DNA of 49,131 nucleotides from Basidiobolus meristosporus CBS 931.73 (Eukaryota; Fungi; Basidiobolomycota): NCBI GenBank assembly GCA_002104905.1, contig MCFE01000658.1, forward strand, positions 1 to 49,131. Reading direction: 5' to 3'. The first letter of the stretch is position 1; each line of letters opens with the position of its first letter. The notes below the pieces were generated by a model, which ran no database searches, was not told the origin of the DNA, and saw nothing but the letters and a program-made list of their open reading frames with translations. Positions 2,376-49,131 of this stretch are shown in pieces. The translations under genes and the position numbers were made by a program.

Positions 2376-4445
2376 TTAATCTTTTCGTACTTCCACGGAG
2401 TCGTTGGGGACCCACGCGAAGTCCATGTCTTCCGGGAGTTCACTCAGATTGGTGAACGTTTGGGTGTGCTGACGAAGGGAGGGGGGGAGCTTGTCGGCGT
2501 TACGTGCTAACCGAGCGGATCTGCGCACTGGGGTCAGCACGACGTTGCAGTCCAGTGATTGTCTAAGCTTACGCGATGGGGTGATGCAAGTGTACACCAG
2601 TTGGCTAGCTTCGTTTTCAACCTCCTCCTCCAGCTGCTTTTTCACAGTGCTAACACGCTTTCCAGTAAGCTTCTTTTTCGTTGACTCCCCAGCTGGGGTG
2701 TCAGCATTAAGCAGTCGAGCGGAACGACGCACCGAGTCCAGGGCTGAGGCTTTGCTACGGCCTCTGCGTGTAGCTTTGCGGGGGGTGCTTACACTGATAG
2801 AAGCCTCATCACCACAGCATTCACTTATGGCAACTTGATCGAGCATGTTGGTCATGTCCTCGACCTCCTTCGATGGGACATCCTCCGTTTCACTCATATT
2901 TGTGGTCTCTTCATCTTCATTAGCGGACTCCTCTTCGCTAAAGGTCACATTGGATTCTAGCACAGGAGGTGCCATAGTATCATCATCACTCACGAATGGG
3001 CTACATCTAACCTCCCGGGGCAGTTCAAATACGGGGTCTTGCTCTTTGACCTGGGAATCACTGCTGTCGAAACCATTTGAGGCCCCGTCGACAGTGCTAT
3101 CACCAGTACGCCCCGAGGTTTCCGAAGCTAGCTCGCAGTCTACAGAGGATTCTTTGGAAGCGTGACCATCCATCTGGAAGCGGATGTTGATGGGCTCAAA
3201 CTCCACCATTTCCCCGAGTTCGCGGTGACGACCAATGAAGCGGTTGATGGCCACCTTAACATCCTTAGTAGGCTTGGCTTTCATTTGCTTGCCCTTTTGA
3301 AGCAGACCCAGCGCAACCTGGATGTTCCCGCATTGTTCTTCGAATTTGGCACGCTCGATCCAGTAATCGGCGGTGTAGGTGATATGCACCGTGCCGGACT
3401 TAGGAGGTGCGCCAAGAATCTCGAACATGGCTCGAGTAACCTCCTCCTCACCGGTAGCGGCATACTCCACTACCTTCGACAAGCGGAAGAGCGAGATGCC
3501 ACGAGATGGGACGAACTCTTCGAGCAGGATTTCCTTGGTTTGGGCATCGATCACCTGGAGGATCTTCGGGGTCGGTACGGCGAAAGCCGACTTTCTGGAT
3601 TCCACCAATTGTTGCTTTTGAATCAGGTGGAACTTGTGGACGATGGATGCGACATTTCCGGAGGCATCCTCAGTTGCCTGGTCGCACTGCTTGGGTGCTT
3701 CTTGAGGCTCTGCGGCATTTACAGGCTCGAGTTTAACGATCATACATGGGGAAGTCTGGGTACCAATGGTGGCATATCGGAGGGCACGGCGGGGCGTCTT
3801 CATGATACAACGGGATGTCTCAACCCTTTGTGCTGGCTTGCGCAGAGATGTGAGAGTAACATCGTTGAGGGGACCGCGTCTGACAGTTACTTGAGTAACT
3901 CGGTTGGCAGAAAGATTGATCCTGGGGCTGTTTCTTTTCACCATGGGAGAGCGTTTCTTGTGAACGAGTCTACTCCTTCTGGTTGTTTTGGGGGAGGATC
4001 TGATCGGATTGGACTCTGGGTTCTGAGACTTCAAACTTGTGCTCAAGGTGCCTCTAGTCAGTCTGCTGGTCACAGTGTTCGCGGCGAAGGTGGTCGCCCT
4101 TCTTGCGGCGGGCCTATTGGCCGGGGTTCGAAAACGCGACATGTTGGTCGCATCTTTGGCTTGTGTGGCAGGAGCCAGTGAGTAGGAAGGGTTTTGCTGC
4201 AAGACCAATCGATTGGATATCGCAGTTCTAGGCAGCTTGTTGGCAGTCCGCTGAATAGGGGTCTCGGTGAAGGGGACACGTGGGAAAGTTTTTTTCACGG
4301 TGGCCGGAAGGCGTCTCACGCTGTTGGCAACGCTCAACGGAGCTTTGTTCAACGATTGCCCAGTATTTCGTAGCTCCTCCTTCCTCTTGCGGAACTCCTC
4401 GAGCATCCGACGGCGCTCTTCCTGGGCGGTATTCATTGTTTCCAT
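2376..4445 (-). CDS. 689-aa basic/low-complexity protein with CKAP2_C-like motifs (putative spindle/microtubule-associated)
   Basis: Uninterrupted ORF; YWIERAKFEEQCGNIQVALGLLQKGKQMKAKP and two (TP)VRRSARL motifs resemble the CKAP2 C-terminal domain; many S/T-P sites. Confidence 0.6.
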   Translation of the reverse strand: METMNTAQEERRRMLEEFRKRKEELRNTGQSLNKAPLSVANSVRRLPATVKKTFPRVPFTETPIQRTANKLPRTAISNRLVLQQNPSYSLAPATQAKDATNMSRFRTPANRPAARRATTFAANTVTSRLTRGTLSTSLKSQNPESNPIRSSPKTTRRSRLVHKKRSPMVKRNSPRINLSANRVTQVTVRRGPLNDVTLTSLRKPAQRVETSRCIMKTPRRALRYATIGTQTSPCMIVKLEPVNAAEPQEAPKQCDQATEDASGNVASIVHKFHLIQKQQLVESRKSAFAVPTPKILQVIDAQTKEILLEEFVPSRGISLFRLSKVVEYAATGEEEVTRAMFEILGAPPKSGTVHITYTADYWIERAKFEEQCGNIQVALGLLQKGKQMKAKPTKDVKVAINRFIGRHRELGEMVEFEPINIRFQMDGHASKESSVDCELASETSGRTGDSTVDGASNGFDSSDSQVKEQDPVFELPREVRCSPFVSDDDTMAPPVLESNVTFSEEESANEDEETTNMSETEDVPSKEVEDMTNMLDQVAISECCGDEASISVSTPRKATRRGRSKASALDSVRRSARLLNADTPAGESTKKKLTGKRVSTVKKQLEEEVENEASQLVYTCITPSRKLRQSLDCNVVLTPVRRSARLARNADKLPPSLRQHTQTFTNLSELPEDMDFAWVPNDSVEVRKD

Positions 4446-29755: not shown

Positions 29756-32700
29756 ATGTCTGCTCCAAAAGCCAACTCATATGAGGCACCGCCCAACCAA
29801 ACCCGAGCAAATGGCCAATCCACTCACGACGCAGAGTCTGGTGATATCTTCTCCCCGTACCAACCGCTTGAATCCCCGTCCCGTTTTTCTGACTACACAC
29901 ACACACCACTAGAGCTTAATAATATACATGACCAAGGTGAAGTCGAGTCCCGTGCTCTCGAGGAGCAACCGTCGCTAAATACACCTCGCAGACAAAGATC
30001 CTTAGTACGGCCAGAACGGCACCCTTCGGAGCGCAGATACCCTCGCCGCGTAAGCGGAGTCGATGGAGATGTCATGTCTGACCGTTCAAGGGCCCACAAA
30101 CACCCTGCTTTGGATCGGAGTGGCAGTACCTTCCGTTCTCTTAAGGGAGGAAAATCAGCAGGAGGATCACATTCACAGAAAGGGCGCAGATGCCCTTCAG
30201 TATGGCAAATGTTTGCTACATGTGTTACCTGTTACGCTCCAAATCCATTGCTCTCATGTTGTGGTTAGTTGATGTTGACCCTAGTTATCATTAATGAATC
30301 TGAATATTGATCCTTGCTTACTCAAGGTATGAAAACCAACGAGATCCGTCGAGCCTGGCGCGAAAAGATGGCCCTATGCACCATCATTATATTGTTATGT
30401 GGAGCAGTAGGCTTTTTGACATTCGGTTTTCAACAGGTGTTATGTGGATTTTCTAGCACCGCCAACCGAGTAAAGCATGGCTCTTTACAAGCAACAGATG
30501 CAATTATCAATGGCAAAGTCTATAGATTGACTGGTTTCACCCATCCACCTGCAGCCAATATTCCACAAGATGGCAATCTAAGCCCAGTTATTGGAGGCCA
30601 GGACGTCTCTTTCCTATTCCAAAGTGCGAATTCCCACTGTAAAGGAATTCTCAATGTCCAATCCGGGGATGCTTCTAGTTACTTCCCTTGCGTTGCGCGA
30701 AACTCAACTGCAGTATCCAATCCATCCGAAAATTCCGATCGTGCTGCTTGTCATAGCCCATCGGCTAGTGCCAGAGTTAAGCAGCTGAAGTTTATTGGAG
30801 ATATTTACTACGAATGGCCAGATATATTGAAGAAGGACAGAAACTTTGTCGTTTACAATGGTCATGTTTTGGACATCGACCTCTTGAAATGGTTGGTTCC
30901 AGGGGTTCAAACACCGGCTATTTTTAACGACCTACTCCGACCCGACTCACCTTACCGCGGCAGTGATATCACGTTTTTCATGGGGAACTACCATCGTGCA
31001 GAGGCTAAGTGTGCGATGGATCTACTCAACGTTGGTGTGTTGGATACCCAATCGATGGGTTGCATAATATCAAATGTTGTTCTGTATGTTTCGCTCATTG
31101 TGATTCTTGGTGTTGTGCTTGCCAAGTTTTTCCTGGCTGTCTACTTTGGTTGGGTGTTGAGCTGGCGACTAGGCACGTTCCGTGAAGAGACTTACGAGGA
31201 ACGCATGAAAAGGCTAGAGGCCATTGAACAATGGAGTGAAAACCCTAACCGACTTGCTGTCTCTGCAAACATGCGCGGAACCAGTAGTTTCCTTCCTCAC
31301 GTAAGTCGCTATACGGCGCCTCCACCGATTTACGACGTCAAGCGAAATAGCTATACTCCGCGTCCTGTGAACAATTCCAGCAACTCCCTTTTGATGGTGA
31401 ATACTGGAGTCCAACGGACCCCAATTGCAACTAGAAATGGTCCACCCGATTCTCCTTATTCACAAGTATCAGGGTATAGCTCCTCAACATTTGGATCCAA
31501 TTTGCATGTGCCTCCAGCTCCACCACCACCTAGTTTCCAACCTTTCAACTTCACTCTGGCGCACACTATCCTTCTAGTCACATGCTATTCCGAAGGCGAG
31601 CTTGGAATGCGCACTACTCTGGATTCACTTGCGTTGACTGACTATCCAGAATCTCACAAGTTGATCATGGTCATTGCTGATGGAATAATCAAGGGTGCTG
31701 GAAATGAGTTATCTACGCCCGATATCTGCCTATCCATGATGAAAGATTTCGTCATTCCGCCGGAGAGCGTTCAGCCTTACTCATATATTGCTATTGCGGA
31801 CGGAGTCAAACGCCACAATATGGCCAAAGTATACGCTGGCTATTACAAGTTCGACAACGCGATCATATCTGCAGATAAGCAGCCTAGAGTCCCCATGATT
31901 CTCATTTCGAAATGTGGCAACGCCGAGGAGCAGAATCTACCGAAACCAGGAAACCGTGGTAAGCGCGACAGTCAAATCGTGCTAATGTCATTCCTGCAGC
32001 ATGTGATGTTCAACGACCGCATGACCGAAATGGAATACGAGCTGTTCAACGCTATGTGGAGCGTTACCGGAGTTAGCCCCGACAATTTCGAGATCGTTCT
32101 CATGGTTGACGCAGACACCAAGGTATATCCTGATTCGGTAACTCGTATGGTATCGTGCATGGTCCTTGACCCTCAGATTATGGGACTCTGCGGTGAAACC
32201 AAGATTGCCAACAAGCGAGACTCTTGGGTGACAATGATTCAGGTGTTTGAGTACTACATCTCTCATCACCAAAGCAAGGCGTTCGAATCTATTTTCGGTG
32301 GCGTGACCTGTCTTCCCGGATGCTTCTGCATGTATCGCATCAAGGCCCCGAAGGGGCCCAATGGCTATTGGGTACCCATTCTAGCTAGCCCCGATATTGT
32401 GGAGCACTATAGCGAGAATGTGGTAGACACATTGCACAAGAAAAATCTATTGCTGTTGGGCGAAGATCGGTACCTCACCACTCTCATGCTACGTACCTTC
32501 CCAAAACGAAAGATGATGTTCGTTCCGCAGGCGGTGTGCAAAACCGTTGTCCCAGACACGTTTGGCGTCCTTCTCTCGCAACGTCGTAGATGGATTAATT
32601 CCACCGTGCACAACCTTCTCGAGTTGGTTTTGATTCGGGATCTTTGCGGTACGTTCTGCTTCTCCATGCAGTTCGTGGTGTTCATGGAGCTGGTCGGTAC

Positions 32701-33286
32701 TGTTGTGCTACCAGCAGCCATTTCCTTCACCATCTACTTGGTTATCATCTCCTTCTTCACAACGCCCGTGCCTATCATCCCGCTCATACTTCTCGCCATC
32801 ATTCTTGGCTTGCCCGCCATACTGATCTTAATGACCACCCGGAAGATCGTGTATGTCGGGTGGATGTTGGTTTACCTACTCTCACTGGTCCTATGGAATT
32901 TCGTTCTACCCACCTATGCATTCTGGCACTTCGACGATTTCAGCTGGGGTCAAACACGACAGGTTGAAGGGGAAGCTAAAGGGGGAAGCCACGGTGATAA
33001 GGAGGGAGAGTTTGACGGGTCGAGAATCAACATGAAGAAATGGAACGAGTTCGAAAAGGAGAAGCGTCGAAAGACCAATATTCTCATCTCCCAGTTGGAC
33101 CTGACTACCGAGTCACACCAGAGCTTGGACAAGCTCGGTTACCACACACCCAGCGAATTGGCCAGATTGTCCAGCATTAACTTCAGGGATAAGGAGGGAT
33201 TCCCCTCGAGTGATGCAGACAATGAGATCGAGGTCGACTTCCCCGGAGGGAACACCGGCCGTGAGCGCCCAACCACACAAAAATAA
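29756..33286 (+). CDS. Chitin synthase, division 2 class IV (Chs3-like), 2 exons
   Basis: AWREKMALC, cytochrome-b5-like segment, LVTCYSEG, KPGNRGKRDSQ, VDADT, CGETKIANK, GEDRYLT, LSQRRRWINST, DDFSWGQTR. Confidence 0.96.
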
Positions 33287-39863: not shown

Positions 39864-40199
39864 ATGCTAATCAGAGTTTTGATGACAATGGAAGTGATTG
39901 GGAGAACAAGTAGGTAATGTGGTGCTCACTTTATGATCCATGGAATGTAAAGGTGGTATTAACACTTTTACATGATCTTGTCCAAACCAACATGTAAAAT
40001 TTGTTTGGAAAGGTCTCAAGAACATGTGTAGAGTTTGGGGGCCTTTGGACCACTTCAAGTGTTTTTCATATCCTGGGTACCTGATATTTTGTTGCAACAT
40101 CCCAACAAGGAATTTGGGCAAAATACCTTGAGATTTGCAGACTATGGTCTAAGCAATTGATTTGATGGAATATTAGGTGCAATTACTCAACTTACAACA
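39864..40199 (-). mobile_element. Diverged copia LTR
   Basis: Reverse-complement LTR blocks; minus strand begins TGTTGTAAG (40199); left boundary approximate. Confidence 0.8.
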
Positions 40200-40297
40200 A
40201 AGACAAGATAATATACTAGTATTCTATTCATTTGTAATATCTTCATGACTCTAATAATCTGAGTTTGGTAGGTTTTAGATTTGTACTGCTGTAAATT

Positions 40298-40480
40298 TTA
40301 GGGCTAGGGGGGAGACACTCACCAACAGGTGAAATCTTTATTACAGTTGAAACAAAGAAGCCAGTGCTACTGTTGAGCTTTGATACAAGAATGTGTAGGT
40401 AAGGGGAATTTGTAGGTTAGTTAATCAGGAGAGATGATAGTTATTCAGTGCTCAAGACATTGTTCAGTGGGAAGGTGGGA
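40298..40480 (-). mobile_element. Fossil 3' end of the telomeric LINE
   Basis: TTAGGGCTAGGGGGGAGACACTCACCAACAGGTGAAATC...GTTCAGTGGGAAGG aligns to 44196-44378 with roughly 10-15% differences (estimated by eye). Confidence 0.92.
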
Positions 40481-40835
40481 TGAAAATGTTGTAAAAATTT
40501 GTAATTCCACCTAAATATTCACCTAACTTAGTCACTTTGATCATTATCCTCAAATCCTAGAGAATACTGACCAAATTCCTTGTTGGGATTTACTTAGAAT
40601 ATTTTCACCAAAATACCAGGTACCCAGAACATGAAAATTCTCAAAGTTGTCCAAACAGCCCCAAACTTTGCACACATGCTTTTGGGACCTTCCTTAACCT
40701 ATTCTACATGTTTGTAATGCCAAGACCAGGTAAAAGTATAAATACTACTTTTACATTCAATAAATCATTAAGTGAAAACCACATAATCTACTTGTTCTCC
40801 AAATCACTTTCAATATCTCCAAGACTCTTACAATA

Positions 40836-40850
40836 GGTTATGAGCCCCAG
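40836..40850 (+). promoter_or_regulatory. Primer-binding site GGTTATGAGCCC (copia-type, internal tRNAiMet half-molecule)
   Basis: Abuts the LTR end, as does the copy at 44060; nearly identical to the Drosophila copia PBS GGTTATGGGCCC. Confidence 0.8.
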
Positions 40851-41648
40851 GTTGTTACTCTCTGCAATGTCTGCTACTGCTATTACTGGAATTTTTCCCT
40901 CTGCTGAAAAGTTGGATGGATCTAACTACCAAGTGTGGAAGGTGAAGATGAAGATGCTGCTACAAGAAAGAGGCCTTTGGGATATTGTCATGGGAGAAGA
41001 ATGCCCTCCTAAGAATGTGGGAGAGGAAGCCTTAAAGTACCAGAAGAAAGAACAAAGTGCCTTTAACTGCATTTGCCTTAATGTTAAAGACAAGTTGCTA
41101 ATTCAATGCTCAACAGCAAAAACAGCAAAGAATACCTGGAAGGCATTAGAAGACACCTACCAGTTATGTTCAGCTGCTAAGAAAATTTATCTGGGACAAA
41201 AACTCTTCATTACAAAGATGCTGCCAGGAGAAGAAATGAAAAATCTAATCAACAGAATTACCCTGCTGGTAGATGAAATGGAATCTGTGGGTGTACCAGC
41301 TACTGATGAGGATATGATAGTTACCATCCTGAAAAGCCTGACAGACAAGTTTCAGGGCCTTGTATCAGCCCTAGAGTCCAGAACTGAAGATTTGACCTTA
41401 AATTACGTATATGGAAGACTCCTGGATGAAGAATTAAGAAAGTCAAGCACCAATAAGAAAGAAGAAGAAAATGCTTTAATAAGTAATGATAACCAACAAA
41501 GGAGGTACCCAAGACCCTACAAAGGCAACAGCAACCTGTCTTGTAACTACTGCAAAAGGAAAGGACATACATCACACTGGTGCTTCAAAAAGAAAGATAG
41601 TCAGCAGAAAAAGCCTGAATATGCAAATGCTGCAACAACTGAAGATTG

Positions 41649-41998
41649 TGTTGTAAAAACTTGTATTTCCACCTAAATAATCACCTAACTTAGTCACTTA
41701 GATCATCACCTTCAAATCCTAGAGAATACTGACCAAAATTCCTTGTTGGGATTTACTTAGAATATTTTCACCAAAATACCAGGTACCCAGAACATGAAAA
41801 TTCTCAAAGTTGTCCAAACAGCCCCAAACTTTGCACACATGCTCTTGGGACCTTTTTCAACCTATTCTACGTGCCTGTTATGCCAAGATCAGGTAAGAGT
41901 ATAAATACTACTTTTACATTCAATAAATCATTAAGTGAAAACCACATAATCTACTTGTTCTCAAAATCACTTCTAATATGTCCAAGACTCTTACAACA
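41649..41998 (+). mobile_element. Solo LTR nested in the copia gag/pol junction, 5-bp TSD GATTG
   Basis: GATTG(41644-48)-TGTTGTAA...TTACAACA-GATTG(41999-42003). Confidence 0.96.
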
Positions 41999-43709
41999 GA
42001 TTGACTATTTATATTTGCACTAAATATGACCACAAATAATGATTCTCTGATGTGGTATATTGACTCTGGAGCATCTCAACACTTTACACACCAAAAAGAA
42101 CTTTTTACCCAATATCAAGAAATTCCAATTAAGAAGGTTTTCATGGGTGACGATAGAACACTCAATGCAGTGGGAGAAGGAACTATCCAAGTAAACCTAA
42201 GAAGCAGTGAAGGAAGCCATACACTGACTTTCAAAGAAGTACTCTGTGCACCAGAAATAGCCAAGAACTTACTATCTGTAAGCAAGGCCACTGCAGTAGG
42301 ACTCAGTTTCAGTTTTGACAATTCTGGATGCAAGATCACTGATCAAAATGGTGCCCATATTGCTTTGGGTATCCAAGATCAGAATCTTTACTAGTTGACT
42401 TATATTCCATCATATTTGGGAGTCAATATAAGTAACTTAAATGAAGAAACAGCAATGCTTTGGCACAGGAGATTTGGGCACATCAATTTTGATTATTTGC
42501 GCAAAATGATCAAAGATCAGCTAATTTCTGGAGTAAAAATTGATCCCCCAGCTAATTTGGAGCACTGTGAAGCCTGCATATATGGGAAACAAGCCAGACA
42601 ACAGTTCAAAAGCTCTGGGATAATCAAAACTAAGAAATAATTAGATCTAATTCACTCAGATCTGTGTGGACCTATGCAAATTTATCCTTAGGTGGGATGA
42701 AGTATTTAATCACTATTATTGATGATTATACAAGATACACATGGGTCTACTTCATGGAGAGAAAGGAAGAAGCTCTGTCTAAGCTCAGGCAGCTTAAAGC
42801 CATGTTGGAGAGAGAAACTGGTGAAAAAATCAAGAAAATACACTCTGACAATGGTGGAAAACATACCTCAGAACTCTTCATCCACTTCTGCAAAATTTAT
42901 GGGATTAAGCAAGAGACTACTGTACCATACTCCCCACAGCAAAATGGGGTAGCAGAATGTGCTAACAGATCAATAATTTATATGGCAAGATCTATGATCC
43001 ATGATTAAAAATTACCATATGATTTTTGGGTAGAATTAGTTGCCACTGCTGTATATCTTAAAAGTAGAAGTTATAACTGATTACTTTGTGGTTCTACTCC
43101 ATTTGAAGCATGGTATGGATACAGACCAAGTGCAGAACATCTAAGAATACTTGGGTGTACAGCATATGCCAAGAAACCACCCAGAAATCTGTCAAAATTT
43201 GAGCCAAAAGGTGTTAAATGCATATTTTTGGGCTACTGCAATGAGAGTAAAGCATACAGACTCTACAATACCAAAGCAAAGAAGCTAATCAAGTCCAGGG
43301 ATGTGTTATTTGATGAGAATTCAAAATTTTCACAAAAAATGACATCATATGATGACAAAAATCTGATCTCAAGTCCACCAATTTTCAGGATTGAATCAGA
43401 GCAAAAAATTGAAACTTTTTTCACTCCAGAGGACTCTATAACCATGGTTCAGCCAGAATCAGTGCCCAGGAATATCCCAGAAGTGATCTTTCCAGAATCA
43501 AATGCCCAGAGATCTATTTGGACAAGAAATAGCCCAAATTACTATATCATTGAGGGTACAAACTTAGCCTACACCTATTCAGTCGATATTGATGAACCCC
43601 AGACTGTAAAAGAGGCCCTAAATAGCCCTCAGGCAAAGTTTGGGAGATCTGCAATGACTGAGGAATATCAGGCCCTGATGGAAAATCAAACTTGGAACTT
43701 AGTCAATTT

Positions 43710-44197
43710 TGTTGTAAAAATTTGCATTTCCACCTAAATATTCACCTAACTTAGTCACTGAGATCATTACCTTCAAATCCTAGAGAATACTAACCAACTT
43801 CCTTGTTGGGATTTACTTAGAATATTCTCACCAAAATACCAGGTACCCAGAACATGAAAATTCTCAGAGTTGTCCAAACAGCCCCAAACTTTGCACACAT
43901 GTTCTTGGGACCTTCCTTAACCTATTCTACGATGTCTGTAATGCCAAGACCAGGTAAAAGTATAAATGCTACTTTTACATTCAATAAATCATTAAGTGAA
44001 AACCACATAGTCTACTTGTTCTCCAAATCACTTTCATTATCTCCAAGACTCTTACAACAGGTTATGAGCCCTGAGCTGTCACTCTCTGCAATGTCTACTA
44101 CTGCTATTACTGGAATTTTTCCCTCTGCTGAAAAGTTGGATGGATCTAACTACCAAGTGTGGAAGGTGAAGATGAAGATGCTGCTACAGGAAAGAGG
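43710..44197 (+). mobile_element. Second copia copy nested in RT: 5' LTR (43710-44059), PBS, first ~40 gag codons, then truncated
   Basis: TGTTGTAA...TTACAACA-GGTTATGAGCCC; gag repeats 40840-40972 up to ...CAGGAAAGAGG. Confidence 0.95.
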
Positions 44198-44233
44198 GTT
44201 AGGGGGGGAGACAGTCACCAACAGGTGAAATCT

Positions 44234-47032
44234 TTATTTCAGTTGAAACAAAGAAGCCAGCGCTACTGTTGTAGCTTTGATACAAGAGTGTGTAGCTGAA
44301 GGGGAATTTGTAGGTAAGTTAATAAGAAGTGATGATAGTTCTTCAGTGCTCAAGACACTGTTCAGTGGGAAGGGGGGTAGCAAGAGAGGTAAGAATGACT
44401 TGTGAACAACATTAATGAGGGGAATGTGATAAGGATTGATATTCATCATAAAGGGAGTGTGCTGCTTCAGATATTGCTGCCAAAGGTCTGTCAAGTACTT
44501 CAGGTAGGCCAGCTTGGGGTTTTCTGACTGCAGAATAAATTCAGCAAACTTCTTGACTTCAGGATCTCCAAGTATAGCTCTCCAGCAGGAGCCAGGTGTT
44601 GTGTGGTGTGTTCTCTTCCAGGCCTTAATCAGTGGGTTGTTGCAGTTGTGAAGTCTGAGGTATAATCTGGTTCTAAGGCAAAGAAGTCTGATCTTATAGG
44701 GCATGAACCCAAAAGCACCAAGAATAGCATGTCTGTAGGGGCATTCAGGCAAATGAGGCACCAAGGAGGTAATGCACCATACTGCAAACTTGTCAAGCTT
44801 AGTGCAGTCTCTAGAAGTAAGAGAGAGAAGTGGTAAGCCAAATTCCAGGACAGGGAAGACAAACTGCTTGAGTAGAAGAAGGCAGCTGGGAGCTGAAGTT
44901 GTAGGAGGAGTAACAGCCAGTAGCTTGTGGAGTGCCTGTCTTGCTAGGATAATTCTCTTCTTCAGGTGTGCTCCAGAGTCTAATCCAGTAGGAAGGAAAG
45001 GAAAGCCAAGATATGTAGCAGAAACCTGAGCAGGTAGAGTGGAGTTCTCCAAGTTGATGGGAGAGCCCAAAGGTACTGTCTTTGCAATGGAAAGCTGGAG
45101 ATTATTCTTCTGCAGATACTGGTGGATGGTCTGGGAGTCTTGTTGCACATTGGAGGAGGATATTCTGATGTCATCAGCAAAGAGAGTAACCAGGCAGTCA
45201 GCTGAGAGTCTTGGGAAATCATTCAGGAAGATGGCAAACAGTATAGGACCAAGCACAGAGCCTTGAACCACTCCATTAGGAACTGAGAACACAGCTGATT
45301 GCTCACTTGGGTGCAGAATTCTTGCTTGTGGATCCAGAAACAGAGACCTGACAAGGAGGGTGAGAGAGGTACTGGAGAAGCATTGCAACTTGGACCAAAG
45401 CAGATTTCTGTCAACTGAATCAAAGGCCTTAGTAATATCAAACAGAACAGAGGGATACTTGCACTGGAGAGAGTGATCTTGGCTAAGTATGACTGCATAT
45501 TCCAAGGAGAGGCCAGGAACAAAGCCAAACTGTGCAGGATGAAACTTGAGAGAGTCAGAGTAGAGCTCCTGAGCAAGCAGAAGCTCAAACACCTTTCTGC
45601 AGGTGGGCAGCAGAGATATTGGCCTGTAGGAGCTAGGATCCAGGTGCTTTCCTTTACCCTTGTACAGTGGCAGAACATTTGCAAAGGACCATTCCTCAGG
45701 AGTAGAAAGCTGGGCTGAGCATTGCTGAAACAGTGGAAGCAGAAGTGCAGACATGGCCTTGGTACTAGTCTTCAGAAGCTCATAGGAGATTGTGTCCACA
45801 CCTGGAGCAGTAGAGTTGGAAAGCCTCTTGAGCACATTATGGATTCTCCTTTGATCAAGTGCAAGTGGGATGGGCAGAGTCTTGAAGTCAGGATGAAAGC
45901 CAGGAGTTGAGTACTGCTTTGTAGAGAAGAAGATGTTAGCCAGCTGTTCTGTTGAAGGTAACTTCCTGGAAGAGGGCCTCATTGCCCTGTAGAGTCTTGA
46001 TACTGTTCTTGTTATAGAGTTGGAAGATTGCAGAGGCAAGGAACTCATAATATGATCCCAGAGCTGAGTATGCAGAGTGTGGTGAATTGCCTTGGAGTGG
46101 TGTATTGCTGTCAGGAGGAGTTTCTCTGTTTTTGGGTTAGGGAAGCTCAGGTAGCTTTGTTGCAGGGCTGAAACAATGGATTCCCATTTTCTTGAGGTAA
46201 CAGCAGTAGTCTTGCATGGCAGTGAGAGGGAGGCAGACACCAGAATCAGATGCTTCACAAAGAGCCAGGCATAGTTGAGATCATCTGGCAGAGAAAGTAG
46301 CAAACTGGCAAGCTTCAAGTAGTTCCCAAAGTCTTTCTTCTGATTCTTGGTAGCTTTGTGGGTGAGCACAGTAAGTTTTGGCAGCTTCTTCTTCACAACT
46401 GGTTGCATAGAAAGGGACCAGGCTGGGTGGTCAGAGGCTCTCAAGGATCCTAGCTCAGCTCCAGAGAATTGCTTAACTTCATTCATAAAGTAGAGGGCAG
46501 CAGCAGAAGGGCAGATCCAGTCAACACATCTTTTCTCAGATTGAGCACCTAGTGCTAGCAGGTGGCTTTCTCTCAGGAAGTTCAGTAGGAATGTAGACCT
46601 TGGCTTCATTCTTGCAGTCAGAGTAGTCTTGTTCTCAGGATAGGGAATGTTGAGATCTCCAAGCAAGATAACAGGTGTTGATATAGATTGTTGGTATTGC
46701 TGAACCTTCTGGCATATAACTTGCACTTCCTGAAGGGCTAGACTTGGAGGCAGATAGCAGAGCACCAGACTGATAGTTGGCAACTGGAGAGCAGCACAGT
46801 AAGGGGAGTAAAGAGGAACACAGAGCTGAGGAGTATTGATGGTAGAAGAGATGAAGCAGATAGAGGAGGTATTCTTTGTTCTAGGAGTAGAAAAGCAATA
46901 TAGATTAGTCAAAAGTATAGAGGGTAGCTGGACATCAATCAAACACAGGAGGGAAAATCTTGAAAGAAGTCTCTCTAGAGTTGGTCTTGATGGCTGTATG
47001 CTGTTGCAGTTAAGCAACAGAACTTCAGGTAG
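44234..47032 (-). CDS. LINE ORF2: APE-type endonuclease + reverse transcriptase
   Basis: EN: VLLLNCNS, YLPP, GDLN, VDWI, SDH. RT: APGVD, YRPISLL, AQFGF, FDITKAFD, GVVQGSVLGPILF, LFADD, YLGF. No ATG until residue 137. Confidence 0.95.
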   Translation of the reverse strand, partial: LPEVLLLNCNSIQPSRPTLERLLSRFSLLCLIDVQLPSILLTNLYCFSTPRTKNTSSICFISSTINTPQLCVPLYSPYCAALQLPTISLVLCYLPPSLALQEVQVICQKVQQYQQSISTPVILLGDLNIPYPENKTTLTARMKPRSTFLLNFLRESHLLALGAQSEKRCVDWICPSAAALYFMNEVKQFSGAELGSLRASDHPAWSLSMQPVVKKKLPKLTVLTHKATKNQKKDFGNYLKLASLLLSLPDDLNYAWLFVKHLILVSASLSLPCKTTAVTSRKWESIVSALQQSYLSFPNPKTEKLLLTAIHHSKAIHHTLHTQLWDHIMSSLPLQSSNSITRTVSRLYRAMRPSSRKLPSTEQLANIFFSTKQYSTPGFHPDFKTLPIPLALDQRRIHNVLKRLSNSTAPGVDTISYELLKTSTKAMSALLLPLFQQCSAQLSTPEEWSFANVLPLYKGKGKHLDPSSYRPISLLPTCRKVFELLLAQELYSDSLKFHPAQFGFVPGLSLEYAVILSQDHSLQCKYPSVLFDITKAFDSVDRNLLWSKLQCFSSTSLTLLVRSLFLDPQARILHPSEQSAVFSVPNGVVQGSVLGPILFAIFLNDFPRLSADCLVTLFADDIRISSSNVQQDSQTIHQYLQKNNLQLSIAKTVPLGSPINLENSTLPAQVSATYLGFPFLPTGLDSGAHLKKRIILARQALHKLLAVTPPTTSAPSCLLLLKQFVFPVLEFGLPLLSLTSRDCTKLDKFAVWCITSLVPHLPECPYRHAILGAFGFMPYKIRLLCLRTRLYLRLHNCNNPLIKAWKRTHHTTPGSCWRAILGDPEVKKFAEFILQSENPKLAYLKYLTDLWQQYLKQHTPFMMNINPYHIPLINVVHKSFLPLLLPPFPLNSVLSTEELSSLLINLPTNSPSATHSCIKATTVALASLFQLK

Positions 47033-48475
47033 TCAGGCAGAGGTTGTAGCTTCTTCAGAGGCAGCATTAACAATGTGACCTGCAGAGTCCCAGAGCTCTT
47101 CAAATGGTGCATCACTTAAGTCAGCAAGGAGGGAAATGGCATGGTTCCTGAGGAAGTATGCCACATCATAGGAGGGGGCTTGTCTCTTGATGGCAGCAAG
47201 GAAAGACAGAATGGCAACATGGGCTGGAGGCTTGTTGAACAGTAGAGAGTCAGAGGATTCAGATTCTTCAGGCACTATCTTGAAGTCAGTTTTCAGCCAG
47301 TTAAGGTTCTTCTCCACAAAGGCAACAAATGGGTCAGCAATGTTTTGGTCTAGGATAACCTCCAGAATCTTCCCTTTTCTCCAGGCCAGGTTGACAATTC
47401 TTGAGAGCTGAATATTGCATGCCTTGAGTGCTTTCCTGATGTTGGAAATGGGGGTCCAGGGAACTTGCTTCAAGTACACCACAGTCCAGGTAGAAGCTGG
47501 TGGTAGGTTTGCTGGGGGCTTGTAAGTCCTTCTGTGTTGCAATGGAGCTGCAGTAGTCAGATTGGAGTCCACATTCTCAGTAGAAGGTTTTCTTGATGTG
47601 TCTTGCTGAATAGTACTGGAGCTGGATGTGCTGATAATTCTTGCTAGAACCTTGCCTGCATAAGTCTGAGGTATAGCTGAGATGACTGTAGAGGTGGTGG
47701 CAGCTGGTGCAGGTGGAGAGGCAGAGACTGAAGCAGGAACTGAGGTCACCTGGGAGAAGGCAGTAGAAGCAGGTTTTCTGGGAGGAACAGAGTTCACTAT
47801 CCAGTTGTTCTGTAAAACACTGGAGTAGCTTTTCTGTGGAACAGGATCTTGCTCTTGAACAGGAACAGAAGCAGGAGGCTGGGGCTGAGCAGTAGTGGTA
47901 AGGCAGTGGCACTCCAAGGAAGCTTTTTGCAAGGCATCTCTGGCAGTTTTCAGGGCAGTATTGGCAGCCTCTAAATCAGCAATTCTCTTCTCAATTGCAA
48001 GGAATCTCTGAAGAAATGCATCAGTAGAAGTGCTGGCATCTGGGAGAGCAGTGGCAGGAATAGAGTCCATTGACAGTGGGCTTCTTGGAGGCAAGGAAAG
48101 TGGACTGGCAGATTCAGGCACAAAAGGAGATATCCTGGCAGGAGGAGAAGGAGTATCCAAGGCAGTAACAGAGGCAATTCTTGTTGGTGAAGCAGCAGCA
48201 GGGGAGGCAAGCCTGTTCAAAAACTGGGCAGGAGAGAGTGCTTGGGGAGAGGGAGTCTTCAGCTTGCCAAGCATGTCTTCCATCAGAGTGATACCAATAT
48301 TCCTGGTGCATTTGCAGAGAAAAGTAAGCTTCCTGAGTCTGCCAGCTCTTCCATTCCTTCTGATAGTACCTTTGTTTCCACAGTTGGGGCAAGATATCTT
48401 CTTGACAGACTTGTCAAAGCAATCAAGAACCTTCCTTTCAGGTGTAGTGGGCTTCTGTTGAGGTTTTAGTGGCAT
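47033..48475 (-). CDS. LINE ORF1 (gag-like): Zn-ribbon, coiled coil, P/S/A linker, RRM-like domain
   Basis: ATG at 48475; CPNC...CKC; FLAIEKRIADLEAANTALK; VVYLKQVPWTPISNIRKALKACNIQLSRIVNL. Confidence 0.85.
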   Translation of the reverse strand: MPLKPQQKPTTPERKVLDCFDKSVKKISCPNCGNKGTIRRNGRAGRLRKLTFLCKCTRNIGITLMEDMLGKLKTPSPQALSPAQFLNRLASPAAASPTRIASVTALDTPSPPARISPFVPESASPLSLPPRSPLSMDSIPATALPDASTSTDAFLQRFLAIEKRIADLEAANTALKTARDALQKASLECHCLTTTAQPQPPASVPVQEQDPVPQKSYSSVLQNNWIVNSVPPRKPASTAFSQVTSVPASVSASPPAPAATTSTVISAIPQTYAGKVLARIISTSSSSTIQQDTSRKPSTENVDSNLTTAAPLQHRRTYKPPANLPPASTWTVVYLKQVPWTPISNIRKALKACNIQLSRIVNLAWRKGKILEVILDQNIADPFVAFVEKNLNWLKTDFKIVPEESESSDSLLFNKPPAHVAILSFLAAIKRQAPSYDVAYFLRNHAISLLADLSDAPFEELWDSAGHIVNAASEEATTSA

Positions 48476-48544
48476 ATCCAGAGTTTCAGCTTCAAATTTC
48501 AATTTTTGAGATTTTTGGGTGATTTTTGATGGGCGGGATCAAAA

Positions 48545-48558
48545 TTAGGGTTAGGGTT
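48545..48558 (+). repeat. Internal telomeric motif TTAGGGTTAGGGTT in the LINE 5' region
   Basis: Direct reading. Confidence 0.9.
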
Positions 48559-48700
48559 GCGCGCTGTGACTGCTTTTTACGATCGCAAGGTCAGATCCTA
48601 GGAAAAAATAAAAATAGTTAGTAAAGGTGATTTAATGGATGGATGGATGGATTTGGAGTCAGATTCAATCAAAAAATCAAATTGTTGACTAATTTAAAGA

Positions 48701-48882
48701 GGGTTAGGGGGGAGACAGTCACCAACAGGTGAAATCTTTATTTCAGTTGAAACAAAGAAGCCAGCGCTACTGTTGTAGCTTTGATACAAGAGTGTGTAGC
48801 TGAGGGGAATTTGTAGGAAAGTTAATAAGAAGTGATGATAGCTCTTCAGTGCTCAAGACACTGTTCAGTGGGAAGGGGGTAG
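48701..48882 (-). mobile_element. 5'-truncated (~180 bp) LINE copy capped by the telomere
   Basis: About 97% identical to 44196-44380 (2 substitutions, 3 single-base indels counted by eye). Confidence 0.97.
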
Positions 48883-49131
48883 GGTAGGGTTAGGGTTAGG
48901 GTTAGGGTTAGGGTTAGGGTTAGGGTTAGGGTTAGGGTTAGGGTTAGGGTTAGGGTTAGGGTTAGGGTTAGGGTTAGGGTTAGGGTTAGGGTTAGGGTTA
49001 GGGTTAGGGTTAGGGTTAGGGTTAGGGTTAGGGTTAGGGTTAGGGTTAGGGTTAGGGTTAGGGTTAGGGTTAGGGTTAGGGTTAGGGTTAGGGTTAGGGT
49101 TAGGGTTAGGGTTAGGTTAGGGTTAGGGTTA
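48880..49131 (+). repeat. Telomere: (TAGGG)2 then about 40 TTAGGG repeats, one TTAGG variant at 49112
   Basis: Direct reading; G-rich strand runs 5'->3' toward the end. Confidence 0.99.

What the first reader, a model, noticed from the sequence alone, without database searches (positions are those of the whole stretch)
44196..49131. Telomere-attached APE-type LINE building the chromosome end (HeT-A/TRAS-like orientation) in a fungus that also uses telomerase
Seen: an intact ORF1 plus APE-RT ORF2 sits directly under the TTAGGG array with its 3' end facing the centromere, followed head-to-tail by a truncated second copy. A third, older 3' end lies at 40298. No copy has a poly(A) tail or TSD, and all three 3' ends begin with GGG(T/C)TAGGG. 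Known: the telomere-associated retroelements I know in fungi are MoTeR and Cnl1 (restriction-like endonuclease) and Coprina PLEs (no endonuclease). APE-type telomere specialists are known from insects (TRAS/SART), and terminally attached elements from Drosophila (HeT-A/TART/TAHRE). Inference: this may be an undescribed fungal lineage that transposes onto chromosome ends and alternates with telomerase.
Basis: partly seen in the sequence, partly recalled or inferred. Interest (0 to 1): 0.92.

Follow-up and report, generated by a model that had tools for sequence, protein, structure and literature searches.

The report
Telomere-building LINE family in Basidiobolus
The end of this Basidiobolus meristosporus chromosome is built from an undescribed endonuclease-bearing LINE retrotransposon whose RNA ends in the complement of the telomere repeat, stacked head-to-tail and capped by TTAGGG repeats: a fungal parallel to the retrotransposon telomeres of fruit flies, in a genome that still carries ordinary telomere repeats.

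Summary
The window is a whole 49-kb contig of the fungus Basidiobolus meristosporus CBS 931.73, ending in about 42 TTAGGG repeats. Beneath them lie a 179-nt 3' fragment and a 4.5-kb LINE on the minus strand (ORF1, in-frame UGA, ORF2 with APE and RT), with the 5' end towards the telomere. There is no poly(A) and no target duplication. The tail is CCCTAACCC.

The weak APE call is real: profile-profile probability 97%, AlphaFold2 pLDDT 87, best PDB fold TRAS1 endonuclease, and dN/dS about 0.13.

Two other contig ends of the same genome carry same-orientation arrays of variably 5'-truncated copies. All 28 of the 3' ends found share one orientation. These arrays also hold Gag-only and non-coding elements that share the 3' hairpin module, and a second LINE lineage with its own telomere-like tail. 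That lineage's relatives elsewhere end in CCTAACCTAACC.

The full-length copy joins a truncated copia gag through a 2-nt overlap. This favours priming from free chromosome ends over TRAS-style nicking within repeats.

Close relatives appear only in Basidiobolus or in unnamed assemblies. The papers I found describe only REL-endonuclease (CRE-clade) LINEs and endonuclease-less Penelope-like elements at fungal telomeres.

Verdict: a new variant of a known kind. The mechanism is inferred, not shown.

The parts
48880..49131 (+). Terminal telomere array, about 42 TTAGGG units. The first units are irregular (TAGGG TAGGG) where they join the G-run of the truncated element.
48701..48879 (-). Terminal 5'-truncated copy, holding only the last ~179 nt of the element. 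Its tail CCCTAACCC (48701-48709) abuts the 5' end of the full-length copy.
   Evidence: 97.8% identity to the 3' end of the full-length copy
48476..48700 (-). 5' UTR of the full-length element. It is conserved in related elements (CATCCATCCATCC motif) and has normal CpG content, unlike the element body. It contains CCCTAACCCTAA at 48545-48556, which is also present in a second genomic copy.
47036..48475 (-). ORF1 (480 aa): an N-terminal C-x2-C...C-x-C motif, a coiled coil, and a C-terminal beta-alpha-beta-beta-alpha-beta domain followed by helices. It lacks 22 coiled-coil residues that relatives have.
47033..47035 (-). Single in-frame UGA between ORF1 and ORF2. The context UGA-CU is conserved in all seven elements examined (six of the seven have GCC before it), so it is a probable read-through site.
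46388..47032 (-). APE-like endonuclease domain of ORF2 (about aa 1-215). The motif residues N8, D33 (in place of the usual E), Y93, D126/N128, D171 and D201/H202 are invariant across the family.
44999..45637 (-). Reverse transcriptase domain of ORF2.
44234..47032 (-). ORF2 as a whole (932 aa, open). A private extra base at about 44299-44300 shifts the last ~22 codons relative to other copies.
44196..44258 (-). 3' module shared by all families: hairpin 1 (which contains AAUAAA), hairpin 2 (CACC-loop-GGUG), a C-run, and the tail CCCUAACCC (44196-44204).
44044..44195 (+). Start of a copia-type gag, cut off at the junction with the element. The intact copy at 40840 continues GAAAGAGGCC, whereas here the sequence reads GAAAGAGGGTTAGGG, a 2-nt GG overlap. 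The copia sequence does not resume beyond the element.
40298..40479 (-). Older 3' fragment with tail CCCTAGCCCTAA. It is truncated within a few nucleotides of the same G-rich point as the terminal fragment, and now lies about 8.6 kb inside the chromosome, proximal to a copia array.

Best explanation
This is a Basidiobolus lineage of APE-type LINEs specialised for chromosome ends.

Proposed mechanism:
1. The element is transcribed. ORF1 and, by read-through of one UGA, an ORF1-ORF2 fusion are made.
2. The RNA ends in a conserved two-hairpin module, then a C-run and CCCUAACCC.
3. That tail pairs with the 3' end of the telomeric G strand, or with any free 3' end that offers a couple of G's.
4. 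The reverse transcriptase extends the chromosome's own G strand by copying the element. This is target-primed reverse transcription without a prior nick.

This would explain the fixed orientation (5' end outward), the absence of target duplications and poly(A), the variable 5' truncation and the head-to-tail mixed arrays. Telomerase, or the next element, then extends the new end.

Gag-only and non-coding elements carrying the same 3' module ride on the same machinery.

Shown here: the anatomy, the orientation, arrays at three chromosome ends of one genome, purifying selection, and tails that match the host repeat. Inferred: the priming step, the role of the conserved endonuclease, and present-day activity.
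For: - Terminal position and orientation are the same at three contig ends of one genome.
- 28 of 28 3' ends lie on one strand. Fifteen of the 24 with readable downstream sequence abut another element, most of them 5'-truncated at varied points (starting at nt 36, 52, 55, 117, 138, 531, 2393, 3362, 3528, 3567 and others) and some at or near their own 5' ends. They are separated by 0-15 nt of telomere-like sequence. The flanks show no shared target motif and no element is split.
- The full-length copy joins a truncated copia gag through a 2-nt GG overlap, and the copia sequence does not continue distally.
- The tail matches the host telomere in two LINE lineages. It is CCCTAA in Basidiobolus, in both the window family and family D. 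It is CCTAACCTAACC in family D's relatives, one of which is again joined head-to-tail.
- The 3' module is structured (z -3.7; 5 of 14 pairs show compensatory changes) and is shared by autonomous, Gag-only and non-coding elements.
- All domains are under purifying selection, with dN/dS 0.09-0.23.
- Copies within the genome are 98-100% identical, which implies recent activity.
- The sense strand is C-rich, so the strand continuous with the telomeric G strand is G-rich, in every family member.
Against: - The APE domain keeps its catalytic motifs and is as constrained as the RT. An element that only used free ends would not obviously need it, although Drosophila TART and TAHRE also keep theirs (my own knowledge).
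- Some copies are not strictly terminal: 40298 in the window, and a block 16-26 kb from the end of MCFE01000243.
- I could not search the whole genome, so interior copies are not excluded.
- How the RNA 3' end is formed is unknown; I found no ribozyme.
- The window copy carries two private lesions.
- Some joins could come from template switching or from subtelomeric recombination rather than from separate additions.
Confidence: 0.6

Rival explanations
1. TRAS/SART-like mechanism. The APE domain nicks the G strand inside double-stranded telomeric repeats and the tail anneals at the nick, so elements insert within the telomere tract rather than being added to its tip.
For: The APE domain is conserved and under purifying selection. 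The best structural match is the TRAS1 endonuclease, though only marginally ahead of APE1. Several junctions carry 1.5-3 telomeric units. The orientation is the one I recall for TRAS1 (my own knowledge).
Against: The full-length copy abuts non-telomeric copia DNA with only a 2-nt overlap. Most element-to-element joins carry 0-9 nt of repeat, whereas SART1Bm needs at least three repeats and a poly(A) tail (PMC7265360). There is no poly(A). The APE profile does not match TRAS1 or R1Bm endonuclease by sequence at E<=10.
Confidence: 0.25
2. The arrays arise mainly by subtelomeric recombination or break-induced replication, or by template switching of the RT between RNAs, acting on a few original insertions rather than on repeated independent additions.
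For: The same window-family-to-X join (tail followed by AACCAAGAAC) occurs twice on one contig. X occurs as a 332-nt tandem pair. An old array has been internalised behind 6.7 kb of other DNA. Copy 3 in the window lies proximal to a copia array.
Against: Most joins differ in truncation point and in partner family. Short-read assemblies from several unrelated samples show different joins. This rival explains array growth but not the tail, the fixed orientation or the terminal position.
Confidence: 0.1
3. This is an ordinary dispersed LINE that merely survives in gene-poor subtelomeres. On this view the telomere-like tail is a remnant of the target site.
For: I could inspect only three contig ends and some short contigs. 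TE-rich subtelomeres are common, and copia elements are here too.
Against: The tail is present at every 3' end, including those joined to non-telomeric DNA. All 28 ends share one orientation. There are no target duplications. The 3' module is shared with Gag-only and non-coding partners. The window holds no copy outside its last 9 kb.
Confidence: 0.05

Closest known systems
Drosophila HeT-A / TART / TAHRE (Jockey-clade telomeric LINEs)
   Same: Head-to-tail terminal arrays with the 3' end towards the centromere and variable 5' truncation. Several co-resident families are mixed together, including a Gag-only non-autonomous partner (as HeT-A is) beside APE+RT elements (as TART and TAHRE are). 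The strand running towards the chromosome end is G-rich (PMC5537684 for the Drosophila facts).
   Different: Drosophila elements end in oligo(A) and the host has no telomerase repeats. Here the tail is the complement of the telomere repeat and TTAGGG arrays cap the ends. The RT is not placed in any named clade. ORF1 and ORF2 are joined by an in-frame UGA.
Bombyx TRAS1 / SART1 (R1-clade, telomere-repeat-specific LINEs)
   Same: APE-type LINEs that coexist with telomerase-type repeats. TRAS1 endonuclease is the top structural match for the APE model.
   Different: TRAS and SART insert inside the repeat tract by sequence-specific nicking. They carry poly(A) and need at least three repeats (PMC7265360). 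Here there is no poly(A), some joins are to non-telomeric DNA, and the endonuclease shows no sequence-level match to TRAS1 or R1Bm.
Endonuclease-deficient Penelope-like elements (Athena, Coprina)
   Same: Reverse-complement telomeric repeats at the 3' end are thought to anneal to G-rich overhangs. These elements are restricted to chromosome ends and occur in telomerase-positive hosts, fungi included (PMC8557442).
   Different: They belong to a different RT class, related to telomerase. They have no endonuclease and they carry hammerhead ribozymes. Here the RT is LINE-type (best PDB match L1 ORF2p), an APE domain is present, and no ribozyme was found.
MoTeR / FoTeR / Cnl1 (fungal telomeric LINEs of the CRE clade)
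   Same: Fungal non-LTR elements found at telomeres in a fixed orientation.
   Different: They have a single ORF with a C-terminal restriction-enzyme-like endonuclease and belong to the CRE/SLACS clade (PMC12857005). The element here has an N-terminal APE domain, a separate ORF1 and no REL domain.
Giardia GilM/GilT and Chlorella Zepp
   Same: LINE-like elements that accumulate at chromosome ends (listed in PMC10088271). Tandem organisation is from my own recollection.
   Different: The hosts are unrelated. As I recall, GilM/GilT carry a REL-type endonuclease and Zepp carries poly(A). I did not test either here.

Membership tests
APE-type non-LTR retrotransposon (LINE) | LINE-type reverse transcriptase domain | tested here: met
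   Pfam RVT_1 E 2.7e-25. The best PDB sequence matches are human L1 ORF2p at E 2e-21, then R2.
APE-type non-LTR retrotransposon (LINE) | N-terminal apurinic/apyrimidinic-endonuclease-like domain with catalytic residues | tested here: met
   Pfam alone is below cut-off, and the profile finds no PDB sequence match. However, hhalign against LINE APE domains that pass the Pfam cut-offs gives probability 97%, E 1.2e-10. The AlphaFold2 model has pLDDT 87. Foldseek finds TRAS1 endonuclease, APE1 and L1 endonuclease at E about 1e-10. All motif residues are kept except that the usual E is a D.
APE-type non-LTR retrotransposon (LINE) | Target-site duplication and a poly(A) or simple-repeat tail at insertions | tested here: not met
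   There is no duplication and no A-run at any of the 28 3' ends. The tail is CCCTAA-like. This departs from the usual insertion signature but not from the protein architecture.
Drosophila HeT-A/TART/TAHRE type (works-like test) | Head-to-tail terminal arrays, 3' end proximal, variable 5' truncation | tested here: met
   Seen in the window and in contigs MCFE01000090 and MCFE01000243.
Drosophila HeT-A/TART/TAHRE type (membership) | RT within the Jockey clade; oligo(A) tail; host without telomerase repeats | tested here: not met
   The RT is a separate long branch with no supported sister; named clade references were not available. There is no oligo(A). TTAGGG arrays cap the ends.
TRAS/SART (R1 clade) | Insertion at a fixed site inside telomeric repeats, repeats on both flanks, poly(A) | tested here: not met
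   The proximal flank of the full-length copy is copia gag with only the 9-nt tail between them. Most joins carry 0-9 nt of repeat, and there is no poly(A).
TRAS/SART (R1 clade) | Sequence kinship of the endonuclease and RT with R1-clade elements | tested here: inconclusive
   The family APE profile does not match the TRAS1 (1wdu) or R1Bm endonuclease sequences at E<=10. TRAS1 endonuclease is nevertheless the top fold match, by a small margin. I had no R1-clade RT references for a tree.
Endonuclease-deficient Penelope-like elements | Penelope-type RT, no endonuclease, hammerhead ribozyme | tested here: not met
   The RT is LINE-type, an APE domain is present, and there is no Rfam ribozyme match. 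Only the reverse-complement telomeric tail is shared.
MoTeR/FoTeR/Cnl1 (CRE clade) | C-terminal restriction-enzyme-like endonuclease with a CCHC motif; single ORF | tested here: not met
   There are two ORFs, the endonuclease is N-terminal and APE-like, and the C-terminal 230 aa give no Pfam match. Family features are taken from PMC12857005.

The most novel reading that the evidence does not exclude
Basidiobolus may keep a second, retrotransposon-based way of extending chromosome ends alongside telomerase. It would be run by a community of telomere-tailed LINEs: autonomous APE+RT elements, Gag-only 'HeT-A-like' partners and non-coding passengers.

These telomere-tailed APE LINEs may also form a wider clade, possibly with a single origin, whose RNA tail co-varies with the host's telomere repeat (CCCTAA here, CCTAA in unidentified hosts). 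That would make them a LINE counterpart of the Penelope-like telomere elements and a living intermediate between ordinary LINEs and a Drosophila-type telomere.

A tree that holds the window family and the family D clade together is not rejected, and it scored better than the free search (p-AU 0.69). Long branches and the post-hoc choice of the group weaken that result.
Probability: 0.35. Interest if true: 0.9.

Novelty: new variant of a known kind. Interest (0 to 1): 0.8.

Why it matters
Retrotransposons that build or patch telomeres are known from a handful of lineages. The standard case, Drosophila, has lost telomerase, so the transition cannot be studied there.

Here an APE-type LINE family with a telomere-complementary tail, Gag-only partners and head-to-tail terminal arrays sits in a culturable fungus that still has ordinary TTAGGG caps. 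That makes three questions directly testable:
- how an element comes to use a chromosome end as its primer;
- what a conserved endonuclease is for in such an element;
- how telomerase and retrotransposons share the same ends.

It also adds an endonuclease-bearing LINE to the short list of fungal telomeric elements. The ones I found described are REL-type LINEs and endonuclease-less Penelope-like elements.

The second lineage, whose tails match a TTAGG repeat elsewhere, suggests the strategy may be more widespread than recognised.

Tried and rejected
- **3' module scan of JGI metagenome contigs.** The pattern AATAAAKATTWCACCNNNNGGTG gave 64 hits. None is followed by the C-run and tail, so all are chance matches.
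- **APE family profile against PDB sequences.** No match, even at E<=10. The question was settled by profile-profile comparison and by structure instead.
- **Rfam searches.** At gathering score on the whole window, and at a permissive E-value on 44100-49131 and on L077, there is no ribozyme or other credible family. How the RNA 3' end is formed stays open.
- **5' UTR fold.** No better than shuffled sequence (z -0.22).
- **ORF1 C-terminal domain model** (pLDDT 80). It has a ferredoxin/RRM-like topology but no significant PDB match (best E 0.047). I do not claim kinship with L1 ORF1p.
- **ORF1 homologue search.** Only family members turned up, plus one Basidiobolus ranarum protein.
- **Naming the LINE clade.** No set of named reference RTs was reachable with these tools. 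The tree shows only an isolated long branch among unnamed arthropod, fish, Mucorales and metagenomic RTs.
- **Contigs of P0239 and P0282.** Both stop before the 3' end and say nothing about tails.
- **G-quadruplex motifs.** None in any family member.
- **AAUAAA as a polyadenylation signal.** I considered this reading. The hexamer lies in the 3' arm of conserved hairpin 1, so either reading is possible.


Full report
**Where the window comes from.** The chitin synthase ORF at 30314-33286 is 100% identical to a Basidiobolus meristosporus CBS 931.73 protein recorded on a contig of exactly 49131 bp. The next best matches are other Basidiobolus proteins, then Entomophthoromycotina. A PDR-type ABC transporter and copia-type gag and pol fragments are also present. 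The window is therefore a whole contig of an early-diverging fungus (Zoopagomycota).

**Checking the observation.** The + strand ends in TTAGGG repeats running 5'->3' to the last base (48880-49131). Allowing one mismatch, there are 42 matches to a two-unit probe against 0.15 expected. That is the correct polarity for a true chromosome end.

On the minus strand lies an element of about 4.5 kb (44196-48700):
- a 5' UTR;
- ORF1 (47036-48475);
- one in-frame TGA;
- ORF2 (44234-47032), with Pfam RVT_1 at E 2.7e-25;
- a short 3' UTR ending ...CACCTGTTGGTGACTGTCTCCCCCCCTAACCC.

Its 5' end points to the telomere. Between it and the repeats sits a 179-nt copy of the element's 3' end (48701-48879, 97.8% identical over 181 aligned columns). 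An older copy of the same 3' end lies at 40298-40479 (92%). None has an A-run or a duplicated flank. On the + strand the three ends read GGGTTAGGG, GGGTTAGGG and GGGCTAGGG.

Two refinements apply. The full-length copy has a private extra base at about 44299-44300. That base shifts the last ~22 codons of ORF2 relative to four other genomic copies and a relative. The copy also lacks 22 coiled-coil residues of ORF1 that relatives and another genomic copy have. Both ORFs stay open.

**Is ORF2 really APE-type?** Pfam gives only a sub-threshold hit (Exo_endo_phos_2, E 0.0079). A profile of the family's N-termini finds nothing among PDB sequences. Four other lines of evidence settle the point:
- In an exhaustive profile search, several LINE proteins whose APE domains pass Pfam's cut-offs align colinearly with ORF2 from about residue 5 onward.
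- Profile-profile comparison of the N-termini gives probability 97%, E 1.2e-10 over 188 columns.
- An AlphaFold2 model of residues 1-225 has pLDDT 87. Its best PDB fold matches are the TRAS1 endonuclease (E 1.3e-10, TM 0.64-0.66), then APE1 and L1 endonuclease.
- The motif residues are invariant in the family: N8, Y93, D126/N128, D171 and D201/H202, with D33 in place of the usual metal-binding E.

The domain is as constrained as the RT. Its dN/dS is about 0.13, although dS is near saturation. TRAS1's lead over APE1 is marginal, so I read nothing into it.

**Relatives.** The word-index search and the exhaustive representative search agree that the family is small and isolated. Scores fall from about 1460 bits among members to 274 bits for the next protein.

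Named members are two B. meristosporus proteins, one B. ranarum ORF1, and two short 'Bacteroides fragilis' records that must be contamination. The rest come from unnamed ENA and Logan assemblies.

In an RT tree of 94 sequences the family is a 100%-supported clade on a stem of 1.18 substitutions per site, with no supported sister. The neighbours that carry names are arthropod, fish and Mucorales sequences. I could not obtain curated clade references, so the LINE clade is unassigned.

**Conserved design.** All seven elements examined keep ORF1 and ORF2 in one frame, separated by a single UGA followed by CU. Six of the seven have GCC before the UGA; L008 has GCA. The APE domain begins directly after the stop. 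The likely reading is a read-through fusion.

Every 3' end in every subfamily carries the same module: a first hairpin holding AAUAAA, a second hairpin CACC-loop-GGUG, a run of 5-10 C, then TAA(CCC)(TAA...). The window's 3' 105 nt folds better than all 200 shuffles (z -3.7). Five of 14 consensus pairs show compensatory changes.

Element bodies are almost free of CpG (observed/expected 0.00-0.10), while host genes are at about 0.8 and the 5' UTR at 1.03. The sense strand is C-rich (GC skew -0.18 to -0.26). The strand continuous with the telomeric G strand is therefore G-rich.

**Are copies confined to ends?** I could not search the whole genome. The only two annotated family members in B. meristosporus provide a reasonably unbiased sample.

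*ORX99946 (contig MCFE01000090).* It lies within 5 kb of the contig end. The last 9 kb hold at least seven element fragments, all in one orientation with their 5' ends outward.

*ORX93213 (contig MCFE01000243).* Walking this contig to its end shows, in order:
- (CCCTAA)33;
- a 45-nt fragment;
- a 2.1-kb fragment;
- non-coding X units;
- a Gag-only element;
- a full-length but frameshifted copy;
- another X unit;
- 6.7 kb of other DNA;
- a second block of elements, reaching about 26 kb from the end.

*Short contigs from other samples.* These show the same head-to-tail joins.

*Junction tally.* I found 28 3' ends, all on one strand.
- Of the 24 with readable downstream sequence, 15 abut another element.
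- Most of those partners are 5'-truncated at varied positions, from nt 36 to nt 3567 of the partner; some begin at or near their own 5' ends.
- The joins carry 0-15 nt of telomere-like sequence.
- The flanks share no motif and no element is split.

Some copies are subterminal rather than terminal: 40298 in the window and the inner block on MCFE01000243. I read these as fossil ends.

**The junction in the window.** The intact copia gag at 40840 reads ...GAAAGAGGCCTTTGGG. At the junction the sequence reads ...GAAAGAGGGTTAGGGGGG. So a chromosome broken or eroded inside copia gag was extended directly by the element, with a 2-nt overlap. The rest of the copia element is absent distally. This is hard to reconcile with an enzyme that must recognise telomeric repeats. 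SART1Bm, for comparison, needs at least three repeats and a poly(A) tail (PMC7265360). It is what end-priming predicts.

The terminal fragment ends in a G-run onto which irregular TAGGG units, then regular repeats, were added. The old fragment at 40298 is truncated within a few nucleotides of the same point. On MCFE01000243 the cap starts at a non-G-rich point, so a G-rich seed is not required.

**A community of elements.** Besides at least three autonomous subfamilies (47-62% ORF2 identity to the window copy), the arrays hold three further kinds of element:
- *Gag-only elements* of about 0.96 kb. These consist of a 5' UTR, a coiled coil, the ORF1 C-terminal domain and the shared 3' module, with no ORF2. 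Non-synonymous differences (0.35) are far below synonymous ones (0.82) between subfamilies.
- *Non-coding X units* of about 332 nt carrying the same module.
- *Family D*, a distinct LINE with a canonical APE domain (hhalign probability 97%). Its RT is only 27% identical, and its 3' end reads AATAAA...GCCTAACCCTAACCC.

Family D groups at 98% support with unnamed proteins. Two of those relatives' contigs end in ...CCCCCC(C)TAACCTAACC, the complement of a TTAGG telomere. One of the two is joined at once to a 5'-truncated copy of itself. The tail thus tracks the host repeat in two lineages, and I take that as the strongest indirect evidence that it works by base-pairing.

A tree that holds the window family and the family D clade together is not rejected and scored better than the free search (p-AU 0.69). 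Long branches and the post-hoc grouping mean this only leaves a single origin open.

**Mechanism.** I favour end-primed reverse transcription (confidence 0.6). The tail anneals to the G-strand 3' end, or to any end offering a little G-rich overlap, and the RT extends the chromosome. Telomerase or another element then follows.

The main rival (0.25) is TRAS-like nicking of the G strand inside the repeats. Only the conserved endonuclease argues for it. The two are not exclusive: the endonuclease might open or trim capped ends.

Recombination and template switching probably contribute to array growth; the same window-family-to-X join occurs twice. They do not explain the tail, the orientation or the terminal position.

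**Comparison with known systems.** Functionally the closest is the Drosophila HeT-A/TART/TAHRE system, which shares terminal head-to-tail arrays, a Gag-only partner and G-rich outward strand bias. It differs in tail, host telomerase status and lineage.

The base-pairing tail is the device of the endonuclease-less Penelope-like Athena and Coprina elements (PMC8557442). Those belong to a different RT class.

TRAS and SART share the APE-LINE architecture and coexistence with telomerase-type repeats, but not the insertion signature.

The fungal telomeric LINEs on record (MoTeR, Cnl1, FoTeR) are REL-endonuclease elements of the CRE clade (PMC12857005; PMC10088271). Coprina elements, which occur in fungi, are endonuclease-less Penelope-like elements.

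No paper I could find describes telomeric LINEs in Basidiobolus or any APE-type LINE at fungal telomeres.

**Verdict.** It is a new variant of a known kind, telomere-specialised retrotransposons, with an unusual combination of features. Interest is high for telomere and mobile-element biology. The mechanism is inferred from anatomy and still needs the experiments listed under next steps.

Noticed in passing
window 47033-47035; L001, L002, L003, L007, L008, L009: ORF1 and ORF2 are in the same frame, separated by one UGA followed by CU, in every element examined (six of seven have GCC before the UGA). The APE domain starts right after the stop. A read-through ORF1-ORF2 fusion would be unusual for a LINE.
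   Followed up: partly
L077 3252-4214; L075 1-638 and 1624-2158: Gag-only elements of about 0.96 kb (5' UTR, coiled coil, ORF1 C-terminal domain, shared 3' module, no ORF2) sit in the terminal arrays. Non-synonymous change is well below synonymous change between subfamilies. They are a HeT-A-like non-autonomous partner.
   Followed up: partly
L076 6968-11701 (= L077 16033-20766); L078 and L079 3' ends: A second, distantly related LINE (family D, RT 27% identical, canonical APE) lies in the same array and orientation, with the tail CCTAACCCTAACCC. Its relatives from unidentified samples end in CCCCCC(C)TAACCTAACC, the complement of TTAGG. One of them is joined head-to-tail to itself.
   Followed up: partly
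L077 2557-3231 and 8766-9304; L076 12718-13115: Non-coding X units of about 332 nt carry the family's 3' hairpin module and tail, and occur once as a tandem pair. They are SINE-like passengers. I found no tRNA or Rfam match.
   Followed up: partly
window 44196-48475 versus 48476-48700; copia array 40479-44195: CpG observed/expected is 0.03 in the element body and 0.05 in the copia array. It is 1.03 in the element's 5' UTR and about 0.8 in host genes. All family members elsewhere show the same depletion. This suggests cytosine methylation of transposons with a spared promoter region.
   Followed up: partly
window 48545-48556 (also L077 4346-4357) and window 46134-46142: CCCTAACCCTAA lies inside the 5' UTR in two genomic copies. 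CCCTAACCC lies within the invariant F-P-N-P codons of ORF2 in every family member. These could act as built-in telomere seeds after erosion, or they could be coincidence.
   Followed up: no
window 39873-44195: There is a tandem copia array in which LTR-like segments (starting at 40479, 41645 and 43706) are each followed by gag or internal fragments. An inverted LTR fragment lies at 39873-40118. The old LINE fragment at 40298-40479 sits between the inverted and the direct copies.
   Followed up: no
proteins P0362 and P0368 (EYE59617.1, EYE59572.1): Two partial 'Bacteroides fragilis' records on contigs of 1.5 and 0.7 kb belong to 90%-identity clusters of this fungal LINE family. They are almost certainly eukaryotic contamination of a bacterial assembly.
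   Followed up: no
L075 10790-18266: Five tandem CHAP-domain genes (four of 181 aa, one of 231 aa) lie directly inside the terminal array on MCFE01000090. This is a bacterial-type domain family expanded in a fungal subtelomere.
   Followed up: no
window 48866-48895 and 40466-40479: The terminal fragment and the old internal fragment are truncated within a few nucleotides of each other, at the G-run GGGAAGG(G/T)GGG. This could mark a preferred stopping or healing point, or common descent by duplication.
   Followed up: partly
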